A stretch of 10,123 nt of DNA, taken from Zygophlyctis sp. KS116 (lineage: Eukaryota; Fungi; Chytridiomycota). The notes under the pieces were generated by a model. The model saw nothing but the letters and a program-made list of their open reading frames with translations, had not been told where the DNA came from and ran no database searches. Made by a program: the position numbers and the translations under genes. Of this stretch, positions 1-10,048 are shown in pieces (position 1 is the stretch's first letter; each line of letters starts with the position of its first letter). The stretch is taken from positions 1-10,123 of the forward strand of contig BAAFSQ010000336.1 of assembly GCA_054661495.1 (NCBI GenBank), read 5' to 3'.

Positions 1-679
1 CATCGATGCAATATTTGAAGGAACTCTTCCACTGAGTGGATTTTGTCGAAGACTTCTAAAAATTCAGCCAAGAAAACGTTACAGCTGACGTAAATTTATC
101 AAATTCCCAATTTCGGCAGGAATATTTCCAGTAAATGAATTTTTTCTCATATGGCTAAAATTTCAGTAAGAAGAAAATTACATCCATTCCAGTTTAGTCA
201 AAGTTCCAATCCATGAAGGAATCGAACCGGTGAGACTATTATCAGCAAGAACCCTTAAATTAAATCAACAAACCAATTACAGATATTTCAACTTAGTCAA
301 GTAACTAATTTCTAGTGGAATTGAACCTGAGAGTTGATTATCATACAAATCACTACAATTTTAAATTAGAAAATAATTACAGCGAAGTCAAATTTGTCAA
401 CTTTCCAATTTCAGCAGGGATTGAACCAGAGAGGCCTTTCCCGCTCCACTCAATGGCGGTAACTTTGTTTGTAGAATCACAGTCTACACCAGACATTGAG
501 CAACAAGCAGTGGCACTAGTATGAGAAGCTGAAGTAGATTTCCCCATCAGTTGCCATGATCGGACAACCCAACAACATTGAGGGGAACCTGAATTGCATG
601 AAACCGCTGCATCAGTCCCTGTGATCAATGCCGAGAGAGCCAATGCTAAGATAGAGTTCTTGAGAGATGAAGAAATCAT
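1..679 (-). CDS. Secreted plant-type (24-aa) leucine-rich-repeat protein; 3' part runs off the left edge. Exons 679-381, 352-281, 253-182, 154-83, 55-<1
   Basis: ATG at 679, then a signal peptide (MISSSLKNSILALALSALITGTDA) and a Cys-rich cap (CNSGSPQCCW...CCSMSGVDC). Manual splicing of GT-AG introns 380-353 (28 nt), 280-254, 181-155 and 82-56 (27 nt each) gives stop-free repeats: LDLYDNQLSGSIPLEISYLTKLKY / LVLADNSLTGSIPSWIGTLTKLEW / IHMRKNSFTGNIPAEIGNLINLRQ / LSLRQNPLSGRVPSNIASM. Confidence 0.93.
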
Positions 680-790: not shown

Positions 791-1225
791 TTATCGATCA
801 CTCACTAATTTATTCCATAATTAATAAAACATTTTGTTACAGGAAGTGCTCGTTATTAGTTCTTTCAGAATCCGATATTATCAATCGCTTTCAGAACAAT
901 CACACAAGCAAGCATTGAAATTCGAAGTCATGTCGCCACTGTATCCAAGGCCTACCAAGACTATAAAACATCTGGTCTGCTCTTTCCTTGCAAATCGGCA
1001 CAAACTTCCGTGGATCGCTGGCAAGTTTTTCAGGTTTACAATAGTAAGTCAAGGCATGATACAATCCTGGTAGGGGTTGCCATCATTGTCGGTCGGATTG
1101 TTTACTTTCGTATCAGTATTACCAGTAGATAGTAAGTTTTCCAAAAAAGTAGAGAAAACTTGTATTCTCTTGACAAGTAAAGGCTTGGAAGGAAATGATA
1201 CTTTACTAAAAGCATATATTCTCAT
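791..1225 (-). pseudogene. Decayed copy of the GNP(Y/F)QDC Cys-rich domain
   Basis: Minus strand reads ...LVKRIQVFST...DGNPYQDCI, a 1-nt frameshift at ~1056, then ALTYYCKPEKL...ICKERADQMFYSLGRPWIQWR, further lesions, and ...LPVT...LWNKLVSDR*. Colinear with 8182-8607 and 9329-9665. Confidence 0.8.
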
Positions 1226-1381
1226 TTTTTATTACGATGAAGTCTATTGATTATAAATTAACTGCATTCACGAATGGTCTACAAAGTAATCGGAACAAGA
1301 GAAATAGATCATTAATTAGCTCAATCAACCAGGACTCTCATCGCCGATTTGTAAGTCTAGGGGTAGTTCAAGGTTAAAAGT

Positions 1382-1652
1382 TTATTGAGATTCTTCCTTT
1401 TCCTTTTTCCATTTTGCTATTCTTTGAGGAAATACTTTTCTTTCAACAGCTAAGATTTAGAATGTTTGTAAAATTACCATAAAATGGAAGGAAAAAGAAA
1501 AAGGCACAAGCAGTCCAATATCCTACAACAAATCTAGATCTGTTTCTTATTCCAAAAGGTACAGGTCCATTTCCTCTCCAGTTGATTCCTTCAAAATGGA
1601 TTGGGCCCCATGGAGAATTTGAGCCTCTCTTTAAGAAACCGCTTTTCAACAT
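1382..1652 (-). CDS. Small single-TM protein (80 aa), probably cytochrome c oxidase subunit VIIc/yeast Cox8-like. Exons 1652-1478, 1449-1382
   Basis: Basic N-terminal presequence, then HFEG...VPFGIRNRSRFVVGYW...FFFFLPFY, resembling the COX7C pattern. A 28-nt GT-AG intron (1477-1450) restores the tail AVERKVFPQRIAKWKKEKEESQ*. Confidence 0.65.
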
Positions 1653-1764
1653 TTTTTACGCGACTCAAACCCTCAAACGCGATTCTAGGGGTTGGTATTG
1701 TGTTGAATCTAAAATCTTGTAGTGAATAACATGCTTTATATTACATTTTTATAAACTGATAAAA

Positions 1765-4240
1765 TTACCAAAAATCCTTTAAAGTGTTGAGAGTCACGTT
1801 TCCATTCAATGAACAATCAGGTACAATATATCTTCCGACTGTAGAATTATAATAGGGTGATCCACAGATTAGTCCGGGTTTGGTATGAAATGTAGTGGAA
1901 CAGTAATCACGAAGAGATAATCCATTGTCTGATCCAGCGATTCGTTTTTTTCTTTTATAGATAAATGATCCATGTCCACCATAATTATCAGAGAATGAAT
2001 TTGGAAGACTATAAATAAATTATACTTTATATACCATTTCCAGATTTCTGTGATTTCAGAATTAAGAGTTCCATTTGTATAAATATCTTTTTGTTCACAG
2101 CAACAGTTGGAAGTGAATTCAGTCCAATTTGCATATCCAGCAAATTCATATTTTGTAATTTCAATCTGGCCCTGTTCGAAAACTAGAGTTGGAATTGAAG
2201 AAGATAAAACATTTGAATTTGTGGTTGATCGGACGACTCCAGCAGTTGTAATACAAATACTTAGAAAACATGCTACTCCAAGCATTAAAAAATATTCAAC
2301 AATTCTATGGACAGAATAATTATTTAGTTCACTGTCGATAGATTTAAACATCTAATTTGATTAATACTTTACAAAATACCTGTTTATCTTGATCAGAAGT
2401 GAAATCATTGATTTTTTTTCCAGCTTTTAGTGCCTTCTTTTCTTCTTTACTCTTTTTGACTCCAAGCCATATTTGATATCCAAAAAATCCAATCGGAAAT
2501 GCAATATTTACAACTCCAAGAATAACAAATGCGGATTGAGGTATATTTACTCCATATGAAACTGCAATACCAACTCCTGCAGTGGCTGTATTTAACAAAA
2601 AACATGTTGAACCAAGTGCATTAACTAGTCCTGACGTGTATGGTCTTTGAATGATTGAGATTAAAAAGAATATGAAATAAAGAGCGCATAGGATCATCTG
2701 CTAATTAGTTTGTAAAACTTACAAGAACTCTGTCTGGGAGATAAAATCCAAAAACAGCCATTCCTACAACCAACATTTTTTGAATAAATATTACAATTTG
2801 ATAATGTCTAAACTTATACTTGTAGCCAAGATATAATATACGACAAATGTTTTGTGATTTTTCCATCTGAAATTCCCATATTTGGTTTTGATTTCCATTT
2901 GCAAACTCTGGTGCTGGGCCCTGACCAACCAACTTTGTTGATGTAGTTACCAAACGGTAAAATAAGAATGGGATCCCAAAAATCACCAAAAATAGAACAG
3001 GAATGGCTCCAGGCAAGTAATACGGATAAACATCATTCATGCAAGATAGGGATGTATCGGATATCTAAGCTTGTTAATCAAAAATTCATACCAGCCTAAA
3101 ATCGGTTTCTCCTCCACATAATTGAGAAGAAATCGTGCATGTATTTGTAAAATTACAAGCTGTACAAGTATCGGTTGTATTCACAACTCTAGCAAAAGTC
3201 TTTAAAATATCGATAATATCTAATGATTAAAAGAATTTAGATTACTTAAATCAGTTGGTATATCAAAATTTCTAACCAATTCAAAACCACTATTACATGT
3301 TTGCTCTGCACAAGCAAATACCTTAAAAATTGAATTTGTCAATGGGATGTAAAGAATTGTCATCAAAAACAGTATGAGTGATCCAATATTTGAACTAAAC
3401 CATCTCCCCGATATATGCAGAAACTTTCTTCCTGAATGAGATAAACTTAGAAAAAAATGGATTCCAATTAATGATCCAAAAACTAGAAAAAAATATCCAA
3501 TACCTGCAGATTCGTCACCATCAACTACCCAATTTGAAGTTCCCGGAGTTGGGAAATCAGCTAGTAAAACACCCAAATATAGTAAACACGAGGCTATGAA
3601 TCCATTCTTGAAAAGAACATACCACGGAGGCCTTTTATGAAGTCTTCCTTTTTTAATTGATGCAATATTTAGTGCCGCCTGGCTATCATAAACTTCATCT
3701 TGTTCAAAATCAATTTGATCTTTAGATCCATTCTTGGAAGAATCAGGTAAAAGTAATTCTGTTGTTGGACTAACTCTAGATCTTATTTCCTTTTTCTTCT
3801 TCCATTTCTTATACGCCATCAATGCATAACCTCCAGCCAATAATACCATCAATCCAGCGCCAACTCCAATCAAAATATCTGCATACTGTTTGATAAGAGC
3901 GAATGCAGTTGATGGCACCGAATATATCACAATTCCCATCAAAAAACTCCCAATGGCACCCAATCCCAATATATATAGCAGCACAATATGTATCGGTTTA
4001 AATAAAGCCAATAGAATGATCGATATAACAAATGGTAGTACATTTACCAAGATCATAACTTGGCTCCTAAATGAATAATCAAATCGCTGAAAATCTAATT
4101 TGATGGCTTGTAACTATTTTTACATGAAAATTAATTACAGCTTCAATTACTTTTTCTGTTTCAGGCGGCCACTGTATATTTACTGCAGAAATTATTCCTA
4201 GATTCTGAACATGATCAATGATTGTAGAAAAAGAATTCAT
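1765..4240 (-). CDS. ~772-aa multipass membrane protein with Cys-rich loops and a Cys-rich C-terminal domain. Exons 4240-4139, 4113-3246, 3219-3092, 3064-2723, 2697(or 2700)-2380, 2351-2035, 2008-1765
   Basis: Four ORF-track pieces join into one frame via introns of 25, 26, 27, 25 (or 22), 28 and 26 nt. Motifs IIDHVQNLGIISAVNIQWP, LISDTSLSC and LYLGYKYKFRHYQIVIFIQK resemble TRP-like (Flc/Pkd2-type) membrane folds. Many hydrophobic segments. Confidence 0.85.
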
Positions 4241-4526
4241 GACTGATCTCTTTCAGATGTCCGAAATGCGTGCGGAAATATCTATGATTCGGAAAAATTA
4301 CCTGCACTACTTATACTTTACTAATATGCGACTGGAATTAATCATCTTTGTGTCGAATCAAGATTAAACCATTTGTAAAGTTCTAAAGTTCTCAAGTCAC
4401 TCGTCTACAAAGTAAAATATTGTAAACATTGAAATATCAGATACTATTTAAAATATTCTGGATTGATAGTATAAAATTCTCTAGGTGACCTGATAGATAT
4501 TGACTTAAACTAGAAAAATAATATTA

Positions 4527-4622
4527 ATGGTGATGGTGGGGACAGTGTGGCCCAGAGGGTGCCTGATCAGGGGCAGGTCGATGCGCAGCGAGCAGTAAGG
4601 ACAGACGTAGGGAACTGCTGAG
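4527..4622. other. GC-rich island (~63% GC by hand count) in the divergent intergenic region, directly upstream of calreticulin
   Basis: Sharp compositional contrast with AT-rich flanks. Contains palindrome CCTGATCAGG (4562-4571) and a 23-codon uORF starting at 4527. Confidence 0.5.
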
Positions 4623-4635
4623 TTATAAATAAAAA

Positions 4636-6012
4636 ATGAAACTTTTATTGAACATTTTAAGTTTGACTGCTGTATTTGGAACTGTTTATTTCAAAGAAAC
4701 GTTTGACGAAGGATTATCGGACAAGTGGATTGAATCTAAATCTAAAGACGATTATGGGAAATTTATAATTTCTGCTGGAAAGTTTTTTGCTGATGCCTCA
4801 TCTTCTAAAGGACTGCAAACTTCTGAAGACGCAAAGTTTTATGCGATCGCTACTCCTTTTGAAAAGGACTTTGATAACACGGATAAAACATTGGTTGTTC
4901 AATTTTCTGTAAAGTTTGAACAAGGGATTGACTGTGGAGGCGGTTATGTGAAGATTCTACCTCCTGGAAACGATTTAACAAAATTAAATGGAGAGAGTAC
5001 ATACAATATTATGTTTGGTCCTGATATCTGCGGAAGTGAAAAGACAACTCACGTAATTTTCTCAAACAAGGGGAAAAATCATCTCTTGAAGAAGAAGATT
5101 AGTGCAGAGTCTGATGAATTAACACGTAAGTTTATCTTTTTTCAGTTTTAAACACTAGATCTTTACACTTTAATCCTTAAACCTGATCAGACTTATTCAG
5201 TATTAATTGATAATAAGGAAGTAGAAAAGGGAGATTTGTTTGCAGATTGGGATATTCTGCCTCCAAAAGAAATAAGTGATCCAAAAGCCTCAAAGCCAAA
5301 AGATTGGGTTGGTAAGTTTATATATTTGATAACAATTTACTAGAAGAGGAAATGATGGCGGATCCAGAAAGTAAGAAGCCAGAAGGTTATGATGACATAC
5401 CCGCTTCAATTCCAGATTCTAGTGCCGTAAAACCAGAAGATTGGTAATTTTAGAAAAGGGAAATACTAAATTTTTAGGGATGATGATATGGATGGAGAAT
5501 GGGAAGCCCCAAAAATTCCAAATCCTGAATATAAGGGAAACTGGACTCCAAAGGTATTCTTAAAGAGGTTATTTATAATTTAGATGATTAAGAACCCAGA
5601 TTATAAAGGTCCTTGGGTTCATCCTAAAGTACCAAATCCTGATTACAAAGAAGACTTGACTCTTTACAAGTACAACTCTGGTGCCATTTTCTTCGACTTG
5701 TGGCAGGTAAAATCCGGAACTATCTTTGATGATATTATTATCACCGATTCTATTGAAGAAGCAAATGAATTTGCCAAAGAAACTTTCTTGAAGAAGAAGG
5801 ACGCTGAGCTTAAAGCCAAGGAAGCAGTAGATGAGAAGGAGAAAGAAAAGAGAATGCAGGAAGAAAAGGAAATGAAGGAGAAGATGAAGGCAAAGAAATC
5901 TGAGGATTCTGAATCTAAAGAAGATGAAACCGAGGAAGAGAAAAGTCCCAACTCTGATGATGATGAAACTGAGGAAACTGAAGAAGATGACCAAGGGCAT
6001 GATGAACTATAA
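4636..6012 (+). CDS. CALR: Calreticulin (415 aa). Exons 4636-5125, 5159-5311, 5344-5443, 5478-5553, 5584-6012
   Basis: Signal peptide, [14 protein letters not shown] and IMFGPDICG signatures, P-domain repeats ([30 protein letters not shown]), [12 protein letters not shown], acidic tail, no TM segment, C-terminal HDEL. Introns of 33, 32, 34 and 30 nt. Confidence 0.97.
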
Positions 6013-6094
6013 ATGAGAAATGAAGATAAAATAAACCAGCTTTGGGACTTTATTTATTTGAGATTTCATGATAATTGGCACAATCTAAACCATT

Positions 6095-6550
6095 TCAAGA
6101 AAGATTGGGTTTTATGCATTTAGCCCAAGTTTTGACAAATTGACACGAAGATTCAGAATCACAATTCGGACCATTTGATGAGTTTGTACAATATTCACCA
6201 ATCCCAGCAATTTTAGGCAGTGAAATGCATTTTCCAGGAGCAGGATCTGATGCCTTAGAATTTGTCAATGGTACAAAACAAGTTAAATCTTTTATACACA
6301 ATTTTTGTGAGTTGACTTGTCCGATCGTTGAGAAACACTCGTCTCCATTGATTGCAGTTCCAATCTGCATTTCTTGAGTTTCTACTGATGATGGATTTCT
6401 AGAAGCAACTGTTAGCGCAATTACTATAATCATGATAATTGTCAGAATTATTCCAGTAAAAATATAGATGATATTCTTTGGGAGAAAAGACAAAAAAATC
6501 GTTTGTTTGATACTAGTCTTTGTATTTTTAATCTTTGTTGTAAATTTCAT
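6095..6550 (-). CDS. Type II single-pass membrane protein (151 aa) with two Cys-rich repeats
   Basis: Lys-rich N-terminus, TM segment IIYIFTGIILTIIMIIVIALTV, then two 4-Cys units: AINGDEC...LCIKDLTC...GKCI and AGIGEYC...NCDSESSC...AKCI. Confidence 0.75.
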   Translation of the reverse strand: MKFTTKIKNTKTSIKQTIFLSFLPKNIIYIFTGIILTIIMIIVIALTVASRNPSSVETQEMQIGTAINGDECFSTIGQVNSQKLCIKDLTCFVPLTNSKASDPAPGKCISLPKIAGIGEYCTNSSNGPNCDSESSCQFVKTWAKCIKPNLS

Positions 6551-6568
6551 TGTTTAATTTTTGAATGA
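6548..6568 (-). promoter_or_regulatory. Second copy of leader motif TCATTCAAAAATTAAACA-ATG
   Basis: Matches 677-698 except for one A in the A run. Confidence 0.55.
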
Positions 6569-6652
6569 CGATTCGTAAGTTCACTTTGAAAAACACTTGT
6601 AAAATCACAAAATGAAAACTAAAATCTTGCCAAACAAAAAAGTCTTAAAATT

Positions 6653-7617
6653 TCACTCTTGTTGAATTAATCCTACAACAATCGTAATATCATCCATTTT
6701 CCCACCTTGATAATATAATCCTTCTTGTATTGCTTTTTCTTGAAATGGAGAATACCTTTTAGTATCTTCTGCAACTTCTCTAGCCTTTTTTAACAATAAT
6801 GATGCAATTCTTGATGGACTAGAGGCCCCTTTAGTTTTTGATGTTACAGAATGAGTTAAACTTGTAATATCTTCATCCTAAAACTTTTAAAAATCCTAAA
6901 ATAAATACAAAAACATTATCAAAGAGTCCATCAGTCCCTAAAATCACAATATCCCCTTCTTTAATCACAACCTGTTCAAAAAAGGCATCAGCAGGTGAGT
7001 CTTTAGACCCAGTCCCCAATTGAAAAGGAAAATTAAAAGAGTGTTGTTGTTCCAAAGTTTTATAAATGCAAACTCCATTACGAATTAATAATAGCCTAGA
7101 ATCTCCAACATTTGCAATTTTCAACTTATTTTCCTAGTATTAATTGAAGAGAAATTACTCTTAAAATTGTAATTAAAGCGGTTGTAGAACCCAATACTTG
7201 ATCTTTAGTTTCATTTAGTAATGCATTAAGTCCCTGTTGCATAATTTTTCTAGGATCTATATTATAATAATCCAACGATGTGATTTCCTCATTTAATAAA
7301 TCGTCATATTTTTCCAATTCTGAAGAAATATAGTGCATCAGTCTCCTAGAAAATAGAGCCGGATCTGCTTTTCTAACAGAGCACCAACCGCCGACCCCAT
7401 CGGCCACCCCCAATGCATCTTTTCTATAGAAATAAGCATCTTCTCCGACTTGAACCGAGAGTTCGTTTGGATCATGTAAAGTCTTTTGGATCTTTTTAGG
7501 GGCTGCAGAGACTCCAACTTCAAATTTAAATGATTTCTTTAGCTGCCGGCTAGTATTTGATGTATGTAGATTAACTTTTAAGAGATGCAATTGTTTAATA
7601 CACAAGAATCTTGACAT
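6653..7617 (-). CDS. PTC7: PTC7/PPTC7-type PP2C protein phosphatase (302 aa). Exons 7617-7159, 7133-6909, 6877-6653
   Basis: Motifs GEDAYF, GVADGVGGW, GSTTA, ANVGDS, QQHSFNFPFQLG, GTDGLFDNVFDEDI and GGKMDDITIVV. Introns of 25 and 31 nt. Basic mitochondrial-type N-terminus. Confidence 0.93.
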
Positions 7618-7756
7618 TTGCGACTTGGCTGCGAATTTTCTGTTTTCTGACGCACAAATTTTGTCGTTTCGTCCGAAATCTTAAACTATGGACAATGCTA
7701 TTAAATCATTCATTAAGAAGAATATTTACTATTTTAAAATTGTTTTGAGAGTTAAA

Positions 7757-7782
7757 TCATAAACCATTTTATTTTTATTTTC
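7757..7782. repeat. Extra left terminus of the T-rich inverted-repeat element (TCATAAACCATTTTATTTTTATTTTC)
   Basis: Matches the ends at 9114 (TCATAAACCATTTTTATTTTTTTC) and 8059. Confidence 0.6.
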
Positions 7783-8055
7783 ATGAGATGTCGGTTCTTA
7801 GACAAGTAAATAAAGTCGTGATCTTTTCTCTATAATAGTCAATTCAGGAAAGTCGATAATATGGGAAATTGATGTATGCAAAGATGCATTAAATGAAAGA
7901 TGAATATTTTTGATTCCAACGCTTGTATTATGATTGCAAGAGGCGAGTTGCCTTTTGAAGACTTATCATCTCAAGGTTCTTTTATGATCATTTCAAAATG
8001 TCCCCTGCTCTTGCATAAAGTTTTAAAGGATTTGAGTTGGTCAGAGAGGAAATCC

Positions 8056-8183
8056 AAGTCAAAAACCATTTTTTTATTGTTATCAATATCAATCGATGAT
8101 ATAATTGAGTTTTTTTGTTTTTTTCTTTAGTTTTATAGTTTTTTTGTTGTTTTCTTTGAGTTTTTAAGTATGGTTTATGACTT
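8056..8183. repeat. T-rich element, copy A, with terminal inverted repeats (MITE-like)
   Basis: AAGTCAAAAACCAT ... ATGGTTTATGACTT (14 bp, 1 mismatch). 8140-8176 is identical to 9242-9278 (37 nt). Confidence 0.65.
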
Positions 8184-8607
8184 ATGGCACTGTAATCATT
8201 GGATTGTGGACAGTCAGTGCAGAAGTGACAGGGATTTTTGTTCCGTCTGGCGTAGTGTAAAATGCATTGTTCTGTAGGGCAATGTTAGCACTTTTGCAGG
8301 CCAGGGAAGATGGTGAACCAGTAGATCCATCAAATGGCCACTTGCCACAATATATGCGAACGTCTCTCCATGGTGATGACAAACTTTTGATCATCTGGTC
8401 AGTTCTTTCTCTGCAATTTCGTATGCGATTTGCATCCCCTCTAATGTAATCGGAGTTACATATATAACCAATAACATTCAAACAGTCCTGATAGGGGTTT
8501 CCACTTGTATCGCTGTTGCAACTAAACCGGTAACCATCTAAATTTAGAGAAAACACTTGGGCTAAAATTCTTTTTCCTCTGACTGATTCAATCGAAAGCA
8601 TGTACAA
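8182..8607 (-). CDS. Open-frame copy of the GNP(Y/F)QDC Cys-rich domain with no signal peptide or LRRs; possibly a 5'-truncated fragment
   Basis: KRILAQVFS...SGNPYQDCLNVIGYICN...CRERTDQM...PWRDVRIYCGKW...CKSANIALQNNAFY...IPVTSAL. Homologous to two other loci in the window, but lacks their LWNKL ending. Confidence 0.65.
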   Translation of the reverse strand: MYMLSIESVRGKRILAQVFSLNLDGYRFSCNSDTSGNPYQDCLNVIGYICNSDYIRGDANRIRNCRERTDQMIKSLSSPWRDVRIYCGKWPFDGSTGSPSSLACKSANIALQNNAFYTTPDGTKIPVTSALTVHNPMITVP

Positions 8608-8688
8608 TGAAAAAAGTGAAGCTCGTACAGTAGAATTTACACATGATGTAGTTGTCAGTCAATCATCAAAATAAAAGGAACAACGGAA

Positions 8689-9048
8689 TCAAGATTTCTT
8701 AAAAAATCTCATAAATACAAATGTGCCTACAAAAGTCAATAAAACCACTAAAACCGATCCCCAGATTAGAAATGTAGTTGTCCAAGACGAAGACGTTAGA
8801 GATTTGATCTGTTTAGAAGCTTTAGAGAGTGAAATTGTCTGATTTTCTAATTTAAAAGAGATTTCTTTCAAGTTTGCATCTTCTCTAGTCAGAATATTAG
8901 AGAAATTTATAGAATTATTTTTAAGAATAGATGCTTTTTTGATTAATTCACTAGTCAGCTCTAGATCGCTATTTTGGATCTCTGAATTTACCAGCGTGAA
9001 TGGGTAAAAGTAGAAACTTATTGGTGCATCATCTTCCCAGTCAGACAT
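8689..9048 (-). CDS. USE1: Use1-like tail-anchored ER Qc-SNARE (119 aa)
   Basis: Heptad SNARE-like coil ELTSELIKKASILKNNSINFSNILTREDANL...LENQTISL followed by C-terminal TM FLIWGSVLVVLLTFVGTFVFMRFFKK, typical of Use1 C-termini. Confidence 0.7.
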   Translation of the reverse strand: MSDWEDDAPISFYFYPFTLVNSEIQNSDLELTSELIKKASILKNNSINFSNILTREDANLKEISFKLENQTISLSKASKQIKSLTSSSWTTTFLIWGSVLVVLLTFVGTFVFMRFFKKS

Positions 9049-9113
9049 TTTGTCTCACTTGTGTCACGGTTTCTTCTGTGCCAAGGATCCCTGATCAATG
9101 AAAGTACATAGTT

Positions 9114-9334
9114 TCATAAACCATTTTTATTTTTTTCGACGATATCAATGTTTGATTCAAGATTACTGTTTTCTTGGAGTTTTTTTTTAGTTTTCTTTGA
9201 GATTTTATAGATTTTTTGTTGTTTTATAGATTTTTGTGGAGTTTTTTGTTGTTTTCTTTGAGTTTTTAAGTATGGTTTTCTTTTAGTTTTCTAAAGATTA
9301 TATATTTTTTTGAGTTTTTTGTAATGGTTTACGA
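9114..9334. repeat. T-rich element, copy B, with terminal inverted repeats and internal sub-repeats
   Basis: TCATAAACCATT ... AATGGTTTACGA (12 bp, 1 mismatch). Internal repeated units TTTTTTGTTGTTTT, TTTTATAGATTTTT and TTTGAGTTTTT. Confidence 0.65.
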
Positions 9335-10048
9335 TGAAATGAAGGTAGACAGCTTGTTCCACAAGAGAGTCTTGGCAGATTCAATCAGTGCATCAGGAAC
9401 TGACATGATATCAGTTCCTACCGCATAATTTGCATTCAATTTCAAATTTTGGATTGCAGAGTCACAGTTTCCAATGTTACTTAGAAAATGTCCATGCGGT
9501 ATTAGAACAGAGACGGCGCCAAGTTTGCCAATGTCCATTCAATCCCCGAGTCATTTCGTCTACTCTTCTCTTGCATTCATTGACAAAAGAAACTCCTCCA
9601 TTGAGTCTTTCAGAATTGCAATAAAAAATCAAAGAATTCATACAATCCTGGAAAGGATTGCCATCTCAGAATTTGCAAATTTATCAAATTTCCTATTGAT
9701 GATGGAATTGATCCTGAGAGTTTATTGTTGGGAAGATAACTATCATTGTAAATTTAGAAAACAATTACAACTCTTTCAAATTTGTCATTTTCCAATCGAA
9801 GCAGGAATTGATCCATTGAGTTTTTAATTTTCAAGAATAGTAGTTACATTAAAGTTAAATTCTTCAGGTTTCCAGCAAATAATTACAGCGAAGTCAAGCC
9901 GGTCAATTGTCCAAGTGAAGTAGGAATTGATCGATCCCCACTCAAGTTGAGTGGGGATCGAAGCTTAATAAATTTGTTGGAACAGTCACAATCTACACCA
10001 GCCATTGAGCAACAAGCAGTGGCACTATAAGAAGAAACATCAGTAGAT
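9329..10048 (-). pseudogene. LRR + GNP(Y/F)QDC-domain pseudogene, paralog of the gene at 1-679
   Basis: Cap STDVSSYSATACCSMAGVDC matches 1-679, but the signal peptide region is absent. Same intron donor position (9886). LRR exon ~9839-9769 has a TAA, a 1-nt deletion and a lost acceptor. A 29-nt intron precedes an intact 72-nt exon 9739-9668 (YLPNNKLSGSIPSSIGNLINLQIL), joined out of frame to DGNPFQDCMNSLIFYCN...CKRRVDEM...WQTWRRLC, a frameshift at ~9485, then NCDSAIQNLKLNANY...LLWNKLSTFISS*. Confidence 0.88.
9931..9961. repeat. Perfect 15-bp-arm palindrome with 1-nt spacer
   Basis: TCGATCCCCACTCAA-G-TTGAGTGGGGATCGA. Confidence 0.95.

What the first reader, a model, noticed from the sequence alone, without database searches (positions are those of the whole stretch)
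791..9665. Unrecognised Cys-rich 'GNP(Y/F)QDC' domain present three times and attached to LRRs
Seen: three diverged minus-strand copies (motif at 1061-1081, 8482-8502, 9642-9662) sharing GNP(Y/F)QDC-x7-C ... C(K/R)xRxD(Q/E)MxxxLxxxW. Two copies also share C-x-SAxxxLxxNAxY, and two end in LWNKL. Two copies are largely hidden from the ORF track by frameshifts. At 9329-10048 the domain follows LRR exons, implying an ancestral architecture of signal peptide, Cys cap, LRRn and this domain, with no TM segment or kinase visible. I do not recognise it as a known family. Inference: a lineage-specific secreted LRR-plus-payload protein family.
Basis: partly seen in the sequence, partly recalled or inferred. 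Interest (0 to 1): 0.85.

Follow-up and report, generated by a model that had tools for sequence, protein, structure and literature searches.

The report
Chytrid payload protein shared with diatoms
A freshwater flagellated fungus makes dozens of secreted binding proteins that each carry a small, probably cut-free protein of no known fold, and diatom-type algae appear to have acquired that same small protein several times over, which points to an unknown weapon or signal in the conflict between algae and their fungal parasites.

Summary
Observation confirmed: three minus-strand copies of a ~125-aa six-cysteine domain. All three are broken. The LRR join at 9666 is a deletion scar, yet the inferred architecture is right. 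The genome (a freshwater chytrid-type fungus) has 43 matches. Intact genes and intronless public transcripts read signal peptide - Cys cap - LRRn - C-cap - KR - domain. No Pfam, PDB or atlas match; the AlphaFold model is confident (pLDDT 92, best Z 4.3). The domain nearly always starts at a processing site: KR in the fungus, directly after a signal peptide, or after a diatom RXL propeptide. New here: it occurs in the diatom Discostella pseudostelligera and in related propeptide genes. Those algal-type copies pair with different fungal subfamilies at 70-90% identity (single origin rejected, AU p=9e-67), suggesting repeated, domain-precise transfer, probably fungus to alga. Best reading: a Kex2-released secreted payload acting on other cells, carried by a variable LRR; activity is inferred, not shown.

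The parts
791..1207 (-). Copy 1, pseudogene: cap remnant, KR site (KRIQVFS 1151-1171), GNPYQDC 1061-1081, frameshift at about 1058, helix piece 945-1058, degraded 3' part, LWNKL 806-820, stop 791-793
8212..8563 (-). Copy 2: domain-only fragment. It starts exactly at the mature N-terminus (AQVFS 8562), has all six Cys, and has no signal peptide, LRR or cap. A 23-nt deletion relative to paralogs at 8210 removes the last helix. 78% identical over the alignment to intact paralog L003 and 90% to P0003
9329..9665 (-). Copy 3: domain lacking its first ~19 residues. GNPFQDC 9642-9662, frameshift near 9480, LWNKL 9350-9364, stop 9329-9331
9667..10048 (-). Truncated Cys N-cap and frameshifted LRR exons fused to copy 3 by a deletion that removed the C-cap and KR; no signal peptide before the contig end
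1..679 (-). 5' half of an apparently intact family gene: signal peptide, Cys N-cap (CCWVVRSW 554-577), one-repeat LRR exons with 27-28-nt introns; runs off the contig end
   Evidence: N-terminus nearly identical to L017, which ends in the domain
8056..8180 (-). A-rich 3' element behind copy 2; the same element follows many family members in the genome
9113..9334 (-). A-rich 3' element behind copy 3

Best explanation
The three copies are dead members of a large birth-and-death family of secreted pro-proteins of a freshwater chytrid-type fungus. SHOWN (sequence and model): the precursor is signal peptide - Cys N-cap - 2 to 12 plant-type LRRs - four-Cys C-cap - KR - ~125-aa six-Cys domain. The domain folds as an N-terminal beta-hairpin plus a helical bundle with no known structural match, and is predicted to pack rigidly on the LRR/cap unit. 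The genome encodes a kexin. INFERRED (about 0.85): Kex2 cuts after KR in the Golgi and exposes a defined N-terminus, because three unrelated kinds of carrier place the cut at the same residue. INFERRED (about 0.55): the mature domain acts on another cell (algal host, rival chytrid or other microbe) as an effector or toxin-type payload, while the variable LRR/cap part masks it and aims it, as in K2PP effectors and killer preprotoxins. INFERRED (about 0.75 for direction): algae, including the diatom Discostella, captured the payload coding segment from fungal subfamilies at least three times. They placed it behind their own signal peptide and RXL propeptide and keep it under purifying selection, so it works without the LRR and is useful to the alga.
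For: 43 matches in the own genome; 8 open signal-to-domain gene models; intronless public transcripts with the full architecture, e.g. P0080, P0064, P0215. The R of KR is invariant and K at least 90% in 42 LRR/cap-type homologues. Domain starts fall at KR, straight after a signal peptide (P0144, P0158, P0045, L020, L023, L053) or after R-x-L/I. Kexin gene present. AF2 domain pLDDT 92.3, pTM 0.85; full precursor pTM 0.90; LRR closest to PGIP and plant receptors. Discostella gene KAL3759564.1 on a 740-kb contig. Fungal/algal-type pairs: P0200-P0041 85%, P0213-P0215 90%, P0016-P0215 81%, P0015-P0014 70%. Starred mixed clades; algal-type monophyly rejected, p-AU 8.9e-67. Near-identical propeptides (76-84%) carry domains only 38-52% alike. 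Fungal branches are near zero and algal ones longer. Algal-type domain GC3s is 0.28-0.40, against 0.49-0.62 in three of their own propeptides. Cross-kingdom dN is 0.17-0.23 with saturated synonymous sites.
Against: No activity, cleavage or secretion was measured. There are no catalytic-type invariant residues (the conserved ones are Cys, Pro, Trp, Asn, Tyr, Ser, Ala) and no cationic or amphipathic bias (median net charge 0 to +2). Some own-genome copies lack KR (L018, L029, L050, L052). pTM 0.90 also fits a permanent LRR-domain unit. Synonymous saturation means the transfers are not recent and weakens the GC3 argument (Discostella domain 0.345 against propeptide 0.368 and neighbours 0.38-0.47). 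Only Discostella is a named diatom; the other algal-type genes are metagenomic, and the P0016/P0213 host is unknown. The host of the fungus is not known.
Confidence: 0.55

Rival explanations
1. The released domain is a fungal self-signal (mating, aggregation or 'host already occupied' cue) read by a chytrid receptor. Algae captured it as a decoy that jams or repels zoospores.
For: The subfamilies shared with algae are the slow-evolving ones (dN/dS 0.25-0.35 against 0.35-1.07 in other subfamilies), as expected of a ligand held by its receptor. Algal copies stay 70-90% like a fungal version despite saturated dS. A precise free N-terminus is typical of peptide signals.
Against: Over 35 divergent copies per genome (25-40% identical), fused to variable LRRs, look more like an arms-race repertoire than one signal. 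No receptor was identified.
Confidence: 0.2
2. The domain is a non-toxic binding module (lectin or adhesin). It stays attached to the LRR, cut or uncut, and forms a two-headed adhesin for zoospore attachment; algae reuse it as a surface-binding module.
For: Rigid packing in the precursor model (pTM 0.90). In P0128/P0141/P0151 two copies sit in a C-terminal slot that relatives fill with other Cys modules, including a chitin-binding-like one. No catalytic motif. A few copies lack KR.
Against: Many carriers have nothing but a signal peptide or propeptide before the domain. There is no membrane or GPI anchor. The cut is conserved at the same residue across three processing systems.
Confidence: 0.17
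3. Same function, reverse direction: a diatom secreted-protein family was captured several times by chytrids (host mimicry) and grafted behind LRR-cap-KR.
For: Most algal-type genes share one homologous propeptide, as a native family would. The tree needs 7-9 label changes either way. Deep nodes of the mixed clade are unresolved.
Against: All 76 rows outside the mixed clade are fungal-type or unlabelled, so most diversity is fungal. In each pair the fungal branch is about 0 and the algal one is longer. Only one named diatom genome has the domain. Algal-type domain GC3s is fungus-like.
Confidence: 0.2
4. The algal-type genes are contamination or chimeric assemblies.
For: Most come from mixed lake metagenomes.
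Against: One is in a cultured diatom genome on a 740-kb contig among ordinary genes. The propeptide-domain joins recur in many independent assemblies. Synonymous sites are saturated against the fungal copies, which chimeras would not show.
Confidence: 0.03

Closest known systems
K2PP (Kex2-processed pro-domain) fungal effectors such as SnTox3, Avr1, Avr3 (PMC10942635)
   Same: Signal peptide, pro-region, dibasic Kex2 site, then a small Cys-rich mature protein; multigene and fast-evolving.
   Different: The pro-region here is a folded plant-type LRR with Cys caps, not (own knowledge) a short disordered peptide. The mature fold matches no known effector. Found in a zoosporic fungus and in diatoms.
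Yeast and smut killer preprotoxins (K1, K2, K28, KP4, KP6; PMC13211469)
   Same: One secreted precursor cut by Kex2 at dibasic sites; documented horizontal transfer and family expansion.
   Different: No sequence or fold match to any killer toxin. One cut site only. An LRR replaces the beta/gamma domains. The even Cys counts per part suggest no inter-chain disulfide. Killing was not tested.
PGIP and secreted plant LRR / receptor-like proteins
   Same: The LRR part has the plant-specific repeat and Cys N-cap; best structural hit PGIP, E 3e-10.
   Different: Extra C-cap, KR and payload; fungal; one repeat per exon.
Diatom RXL-propeptide proteins (silaffins, Silicanin-1; PMC5525289)
   Same: The algal-type carriers use a signal peptide plus an acidic propeptide ending in R-x-L.
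   Different: The cargo is the chytrid-type six-Cys domain, often with one extra Cys pair, not a silica-associated protein.
Oomycete elicitins (beta-cryptogein)
   Same: About 100-125 aa, six Cys, helical with a beta-hairpin; recalled as a lead.
   Different: Foldseek E 4.6, TM 0.20; not recovered by VIA-align. Not the same fold on these tests.

Membership tests
K2PP effectors | Signal peptide | tested here: met
   Hydrophobic N-termini in 8 gene models and in cDNA-type proteins; judged by eye and a simple score, no SignalP
K2PP effectors | Kex2 motif (KR, RR or LxxR) before the mature protein | tested here: met
   R invariant and K at least 90% in 42 homologues; kexin gene in the genome; a few copies lack it
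K2PP effectors | Cys-rich mature protein | tested here: met
   Six Cys at 98-100% conservation
K2PP effectors | Short, largely disordered pro-domain | tested here: not met
   The pro-region is a folded LRR with caps, pLDDT above 90
K2PP effectors | Cleavage shown, and action on a host | not testable with these tools
   Needs proteomics and assay
Killer preprotoxins | Homology or fold match to a killer toxin family (KP4, KP6, K1, K2, K28, SMK) | tested here: not met
   No Pfam, PDB, Foldseek or VIA match; weak MU117 and Hce2 hints are below threshold
Killer preprotoxins | Kills other fungi; producer immune | not testable with these tools
   No assay
LRR receptor kinases / receptor-like proteins | Transmembrane helix, with or without a kinase | tested here: not met
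   Full-length homologues end with the soluble domain; Pfam finds only LRRs
Elicitins | Elicitin fold or Pfam match | tested here: not met
   TM 0.20, E 4.6; no Pfam hit
GDNF-receptor/GAS1 or folate-receptor Cys-rich helical domains | Fold and Cys pattern | tested here: not met
   Single-member Pfam hints at E 0.04-0.18; chain 5vz4_B only Z 2.7

The most novel reading that the evidence does not exclude
A eukaryotic polymorphic 'guided payload' system: shuffled LRRs aim a Kex2-released toxin or effector of a new fold, and diatoms have repeatedly taken over the payload at the exact processing boundary to turn it against their fungal parasites, or to jam them.
Probability: 0.3. Interest if true: 0.93.

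Novelty: new variant of a known kind. Interest (0 to 1): 0.77.

Why it matters
Chytrid epidemics shape freshwater diatom blooms, yet almost no molecule of chytrid-alga recognition, attack or defence is known (own knowledge). This family supplies a concrete, small, foldable candidate of no known fold. A near-identical version is kept under selection on both sides, which makes its role directly testable with a cultured diatom that has a public genome. Repeated domain-precise transfer between a fungus and diatoms would be unusual; my paper searches found no report of it. Secreted LRR repertoires were thought rare in fungi (PMC2939053).

Tried and rejected
No match in Pfam (single sequences and 25-member alignment), PDB sequences, Foldseek PDB and viral libraries, VIA-align wide and second look, or ESM Atlas by shape and by features. 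The elicitin, KP4/Hce2/MU117 and GDNF-receptor leads were rejected as below threshold. Chance fusion was rejected. Species identification failed: the Rfam search errored, the 18S gene is cut at a contig end, run names are coded, and accession look-ups in papers were empty. DNA for P0015, P0021 and P0197 was unavailable, so their hosts were not confirmed. The fate of the 1-679 gene is unresolved. The 116-row tree finished only as a quick tree. Careful trees used 43-46 rows, leaving out the five 'MGS' rows, fragments and most outgroup rows. Spliced models were built only inside one script to test open frames; the joined-model search step was left out, and searches used single exons by reference or database proteins. 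Broken copies were read with X or * at breaks and never mended.
Full report
1. Observation. The window is a whole 10,123-nt contig (C336) of a 12.7-Mb, AT-rich eukaryotic assembly with 27-29-nt introns. The genome has many chitin synthase matches, a flagellar radial-spoke gene and a kexin. The DNA occurs in freshwater runs. It is therefore a zoosporic, chytrid-type fungus; species and host could not be named.

2. State of the three copies. All are broken. Copy 1 (791-1207) keeps a KR site but has a frameshift just after QDC and further breaks. Copy 2 (8212-8563) is a domain-only fragment. Its similarity to paralogs L002 and L003 starts exactly at the mature N-terminus, and it lacks 23 nt encoding the last helix. 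Copy 3 follows LRR exons through a deletion at 9666 that removed the C-cap, KR and the first hairpin; it also has a frameshift near 9480. These states are reproduced in another study's contigs (X3), so they are pseudogenes and not assembly errors. An RNA-library contig matches 8267-8563 with 13 differences and continues into LRR-like sequence, which fits an expressed paralog (contigs cannot prove transcription).

3. The family. A profile finds 43 matches in the own genome, a lower bound. Eight loci give an open model from signal peptide through Cys N-cap, LRR exons, a C-cap (CG..ICGC..PA..FP...TP..CL) and KR to the domain (built in a script only, not searched as joined models). Intronless database proteins confirm the layout independently of my splicing (P0080, P0064, P0127, P0215). 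Variants exist without LRR: signal peptide-domain-KR-domain (L020, L023) and signal peptide-domain (L053). A full HMMER scan finds 144 clusters at 50% identity, a few of the weakest spurious. None of the fungal-type proteins I looked up carries a name from a cultured fungus.

4. Structure. AlphaFold2 on a 25-sequence alignment gives pLDDT 92.3 and pTM 0.85: beta-hairpin, five main helices and a second short hairpin. Six Cys, one Pro and one Trp are at least 95% conserved across 116 domains; there is no catalytic-looking set and no charge bias. No library recognises it: Pfam, PDB sequences, Foldseek PDB best E 1.5, VIA-align best Z 4.3 among 48,161 chains, atlas TM at most 0.41, viral library. 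This does not prove a new fold, but no known family claims it. The full precursor models with pTM 0.90. The LRR is closest to PGIP.

5. Processing site. The R of KR is invariant in 42 LRR/cap-type homologues. Where there is no KR, the domain usually begins right after a signal peptide, or after an acidic propeptide ending in R-x-L/I. RXL is the known diatom pro-domain motif, removed proteolytically in silaffins (PMC5525289). Three kinds of carrier converge on the same first residue, which argues that the domain is a free mature protein whose N-terminus matters. Exceptions without KR exist (L018, L029, L050, L052).

6. The domain in algae. One RXL-type protein is KAL3759564.1 of the freshwater diatom Discostella pseudostelligera, on a 740-kb contig among ordinary genes. 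Related genes with a homologous signal exon and propeptide recur in lake metagenomes (L032, P0012, P0013, P0015, P0019, P0063, P0123, P0159, P0200, P0209). A second propeptide type (P0016, P0213; L033, GC 49%) has an unknown host. Labels were set from the upstream region before any tree was built. The algal-type domains do not group together (p-AU 8.9e-67; 0% of bootstrap trees). Each sits with a different fungal subfamily: P0200 with this genome's L019/L021 subfamily (82-85%), P0015 with P0014/P0212 (70%, 100/97), and P0213 and P0016 with the LRR protein P0215 (90% and 81%). Propeptides 76-84% identical carry domains only 38-52% identical, and P0209 and P0159 have practically the same propeptide but domains 50% alike. 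The domain has therefore been swapped behind a stable scaffold at the processing boundary. Synonymous sites between fungal and algal partners are saturated (pS 0.72-0.74) while dN is 0.17-0.23. The transfers are thus not recent, are not chimeras, and both sides are under purifying selection. Direction is probably fungus to alga: diversity outside the mixed clade is fungal, fungal branches are near zero, and algal-type domain GC3s is fungus-like. Deep nodes are unresolved, so I put the direction at about 0.75. Three further proteins (P0128, P0141, P0151) carry two copies behind an unnamed N-terminal domain whose relatives have a hydrophobic insert and other Cys modules.

7. Mechanism. Most likely the precursor folds in the ER, is cut by Kex2, and is secreted as an LRR/cap carrier plus payload. 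The payload acts on another cell, and the variable LRR masks and aims it (0.55). Rivals are a self-signal that algae copy as a decoy (0.2) and a non-toxic adhesin module (0.17). Architecture, fold model, site conservation, kexin and cross-kingdom distribution are shown. Cleavage, target and activity are inferred.

8. Comparison and novelty. It works like K2PP effectors (PMC10942635) and killer preprotoxins (PMC13211469), but fails membership of both: the pro-region is a folded LRR and there is no fold match. It is not a receptor kinase or receptor-like protein. Chytrid LRR expansions have been noted (PMC13618815), but I found no description of this domain or of chytrid-diatom exchange. Earlier scan notes on other contigs had already seen the LRR-KR-six-Cys family. 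I re-derived it before consulting them and found no note of the diatom link.

9. Verdict. The feature is real. The window holds pseudogene debris of a new secreted LRR-payload family whose payload is shared, by repeated transfer, with diatom-type algae. New variant of a known kind (Kex2-processed pro-protein) with an unassigned fold; interest 0.77.

Noticed in passing
window 9932-9960: Perfect 14-bp-arm hairpin with a 1-nt loop inserted in the first LRR exon of the pseudogene; also present in runs X2 and X3. Possibly a transposon or repair footprint.
   Followed up: no
window 8056-8180, 9113-9334: A-rich element directly behind the stop of domain copies; the same element follows at least 10 other family loci.
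   Followed up: partly
window 8689-9048: C-terminal half of a Use1 SNARE (Pfam E 1.6e-8). Its 5' part is replaced by family debris here, while the X3 contig diverges beyond 8996 and the X4 piece ends there too: a structural polymorphism or a duplicate.
   Followed up: partly
window 4636-6012 (+), about 6650-7617 (-): Ordinary calreticulin gene (33-nt and 30-nt introns seen spliced in an RNA run) and a PP2C/PTC7-type phosphatase.
   Followed up: partly
window 1443-4056 (-) and 6095-6550 (-): A multi-exon multi-TM gene with Cys-rich stretches, and a small single-TM Cys-rich protein; neither has a significant Pfam match.
   Followed up: no
L038:538-1932 (P0141), P0128, P0151, P0203-P0208: Unnamed 'MGSYISIVNDT' N-terminal domain, in relatives with a long Gly/Ala hydrophobic insert (pore-former-like by appearance), fused to interchangeable Cys-rich C-terminal modules, including two copies of this domain.
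   Followed up: partly
P0013 versus P0040 and P0012: Algal-type genes look like mosaics of one another within the domain, suggesting recombination among captured copies.
   Followed up: no
L058 (G000:C957): Close counterpart of window 1-339 in which the LRRs are followed by a cap-like stretch, then a second Cys N-cap and more LRRs (tandem cap-LRR blocks).
   Followed up: partly
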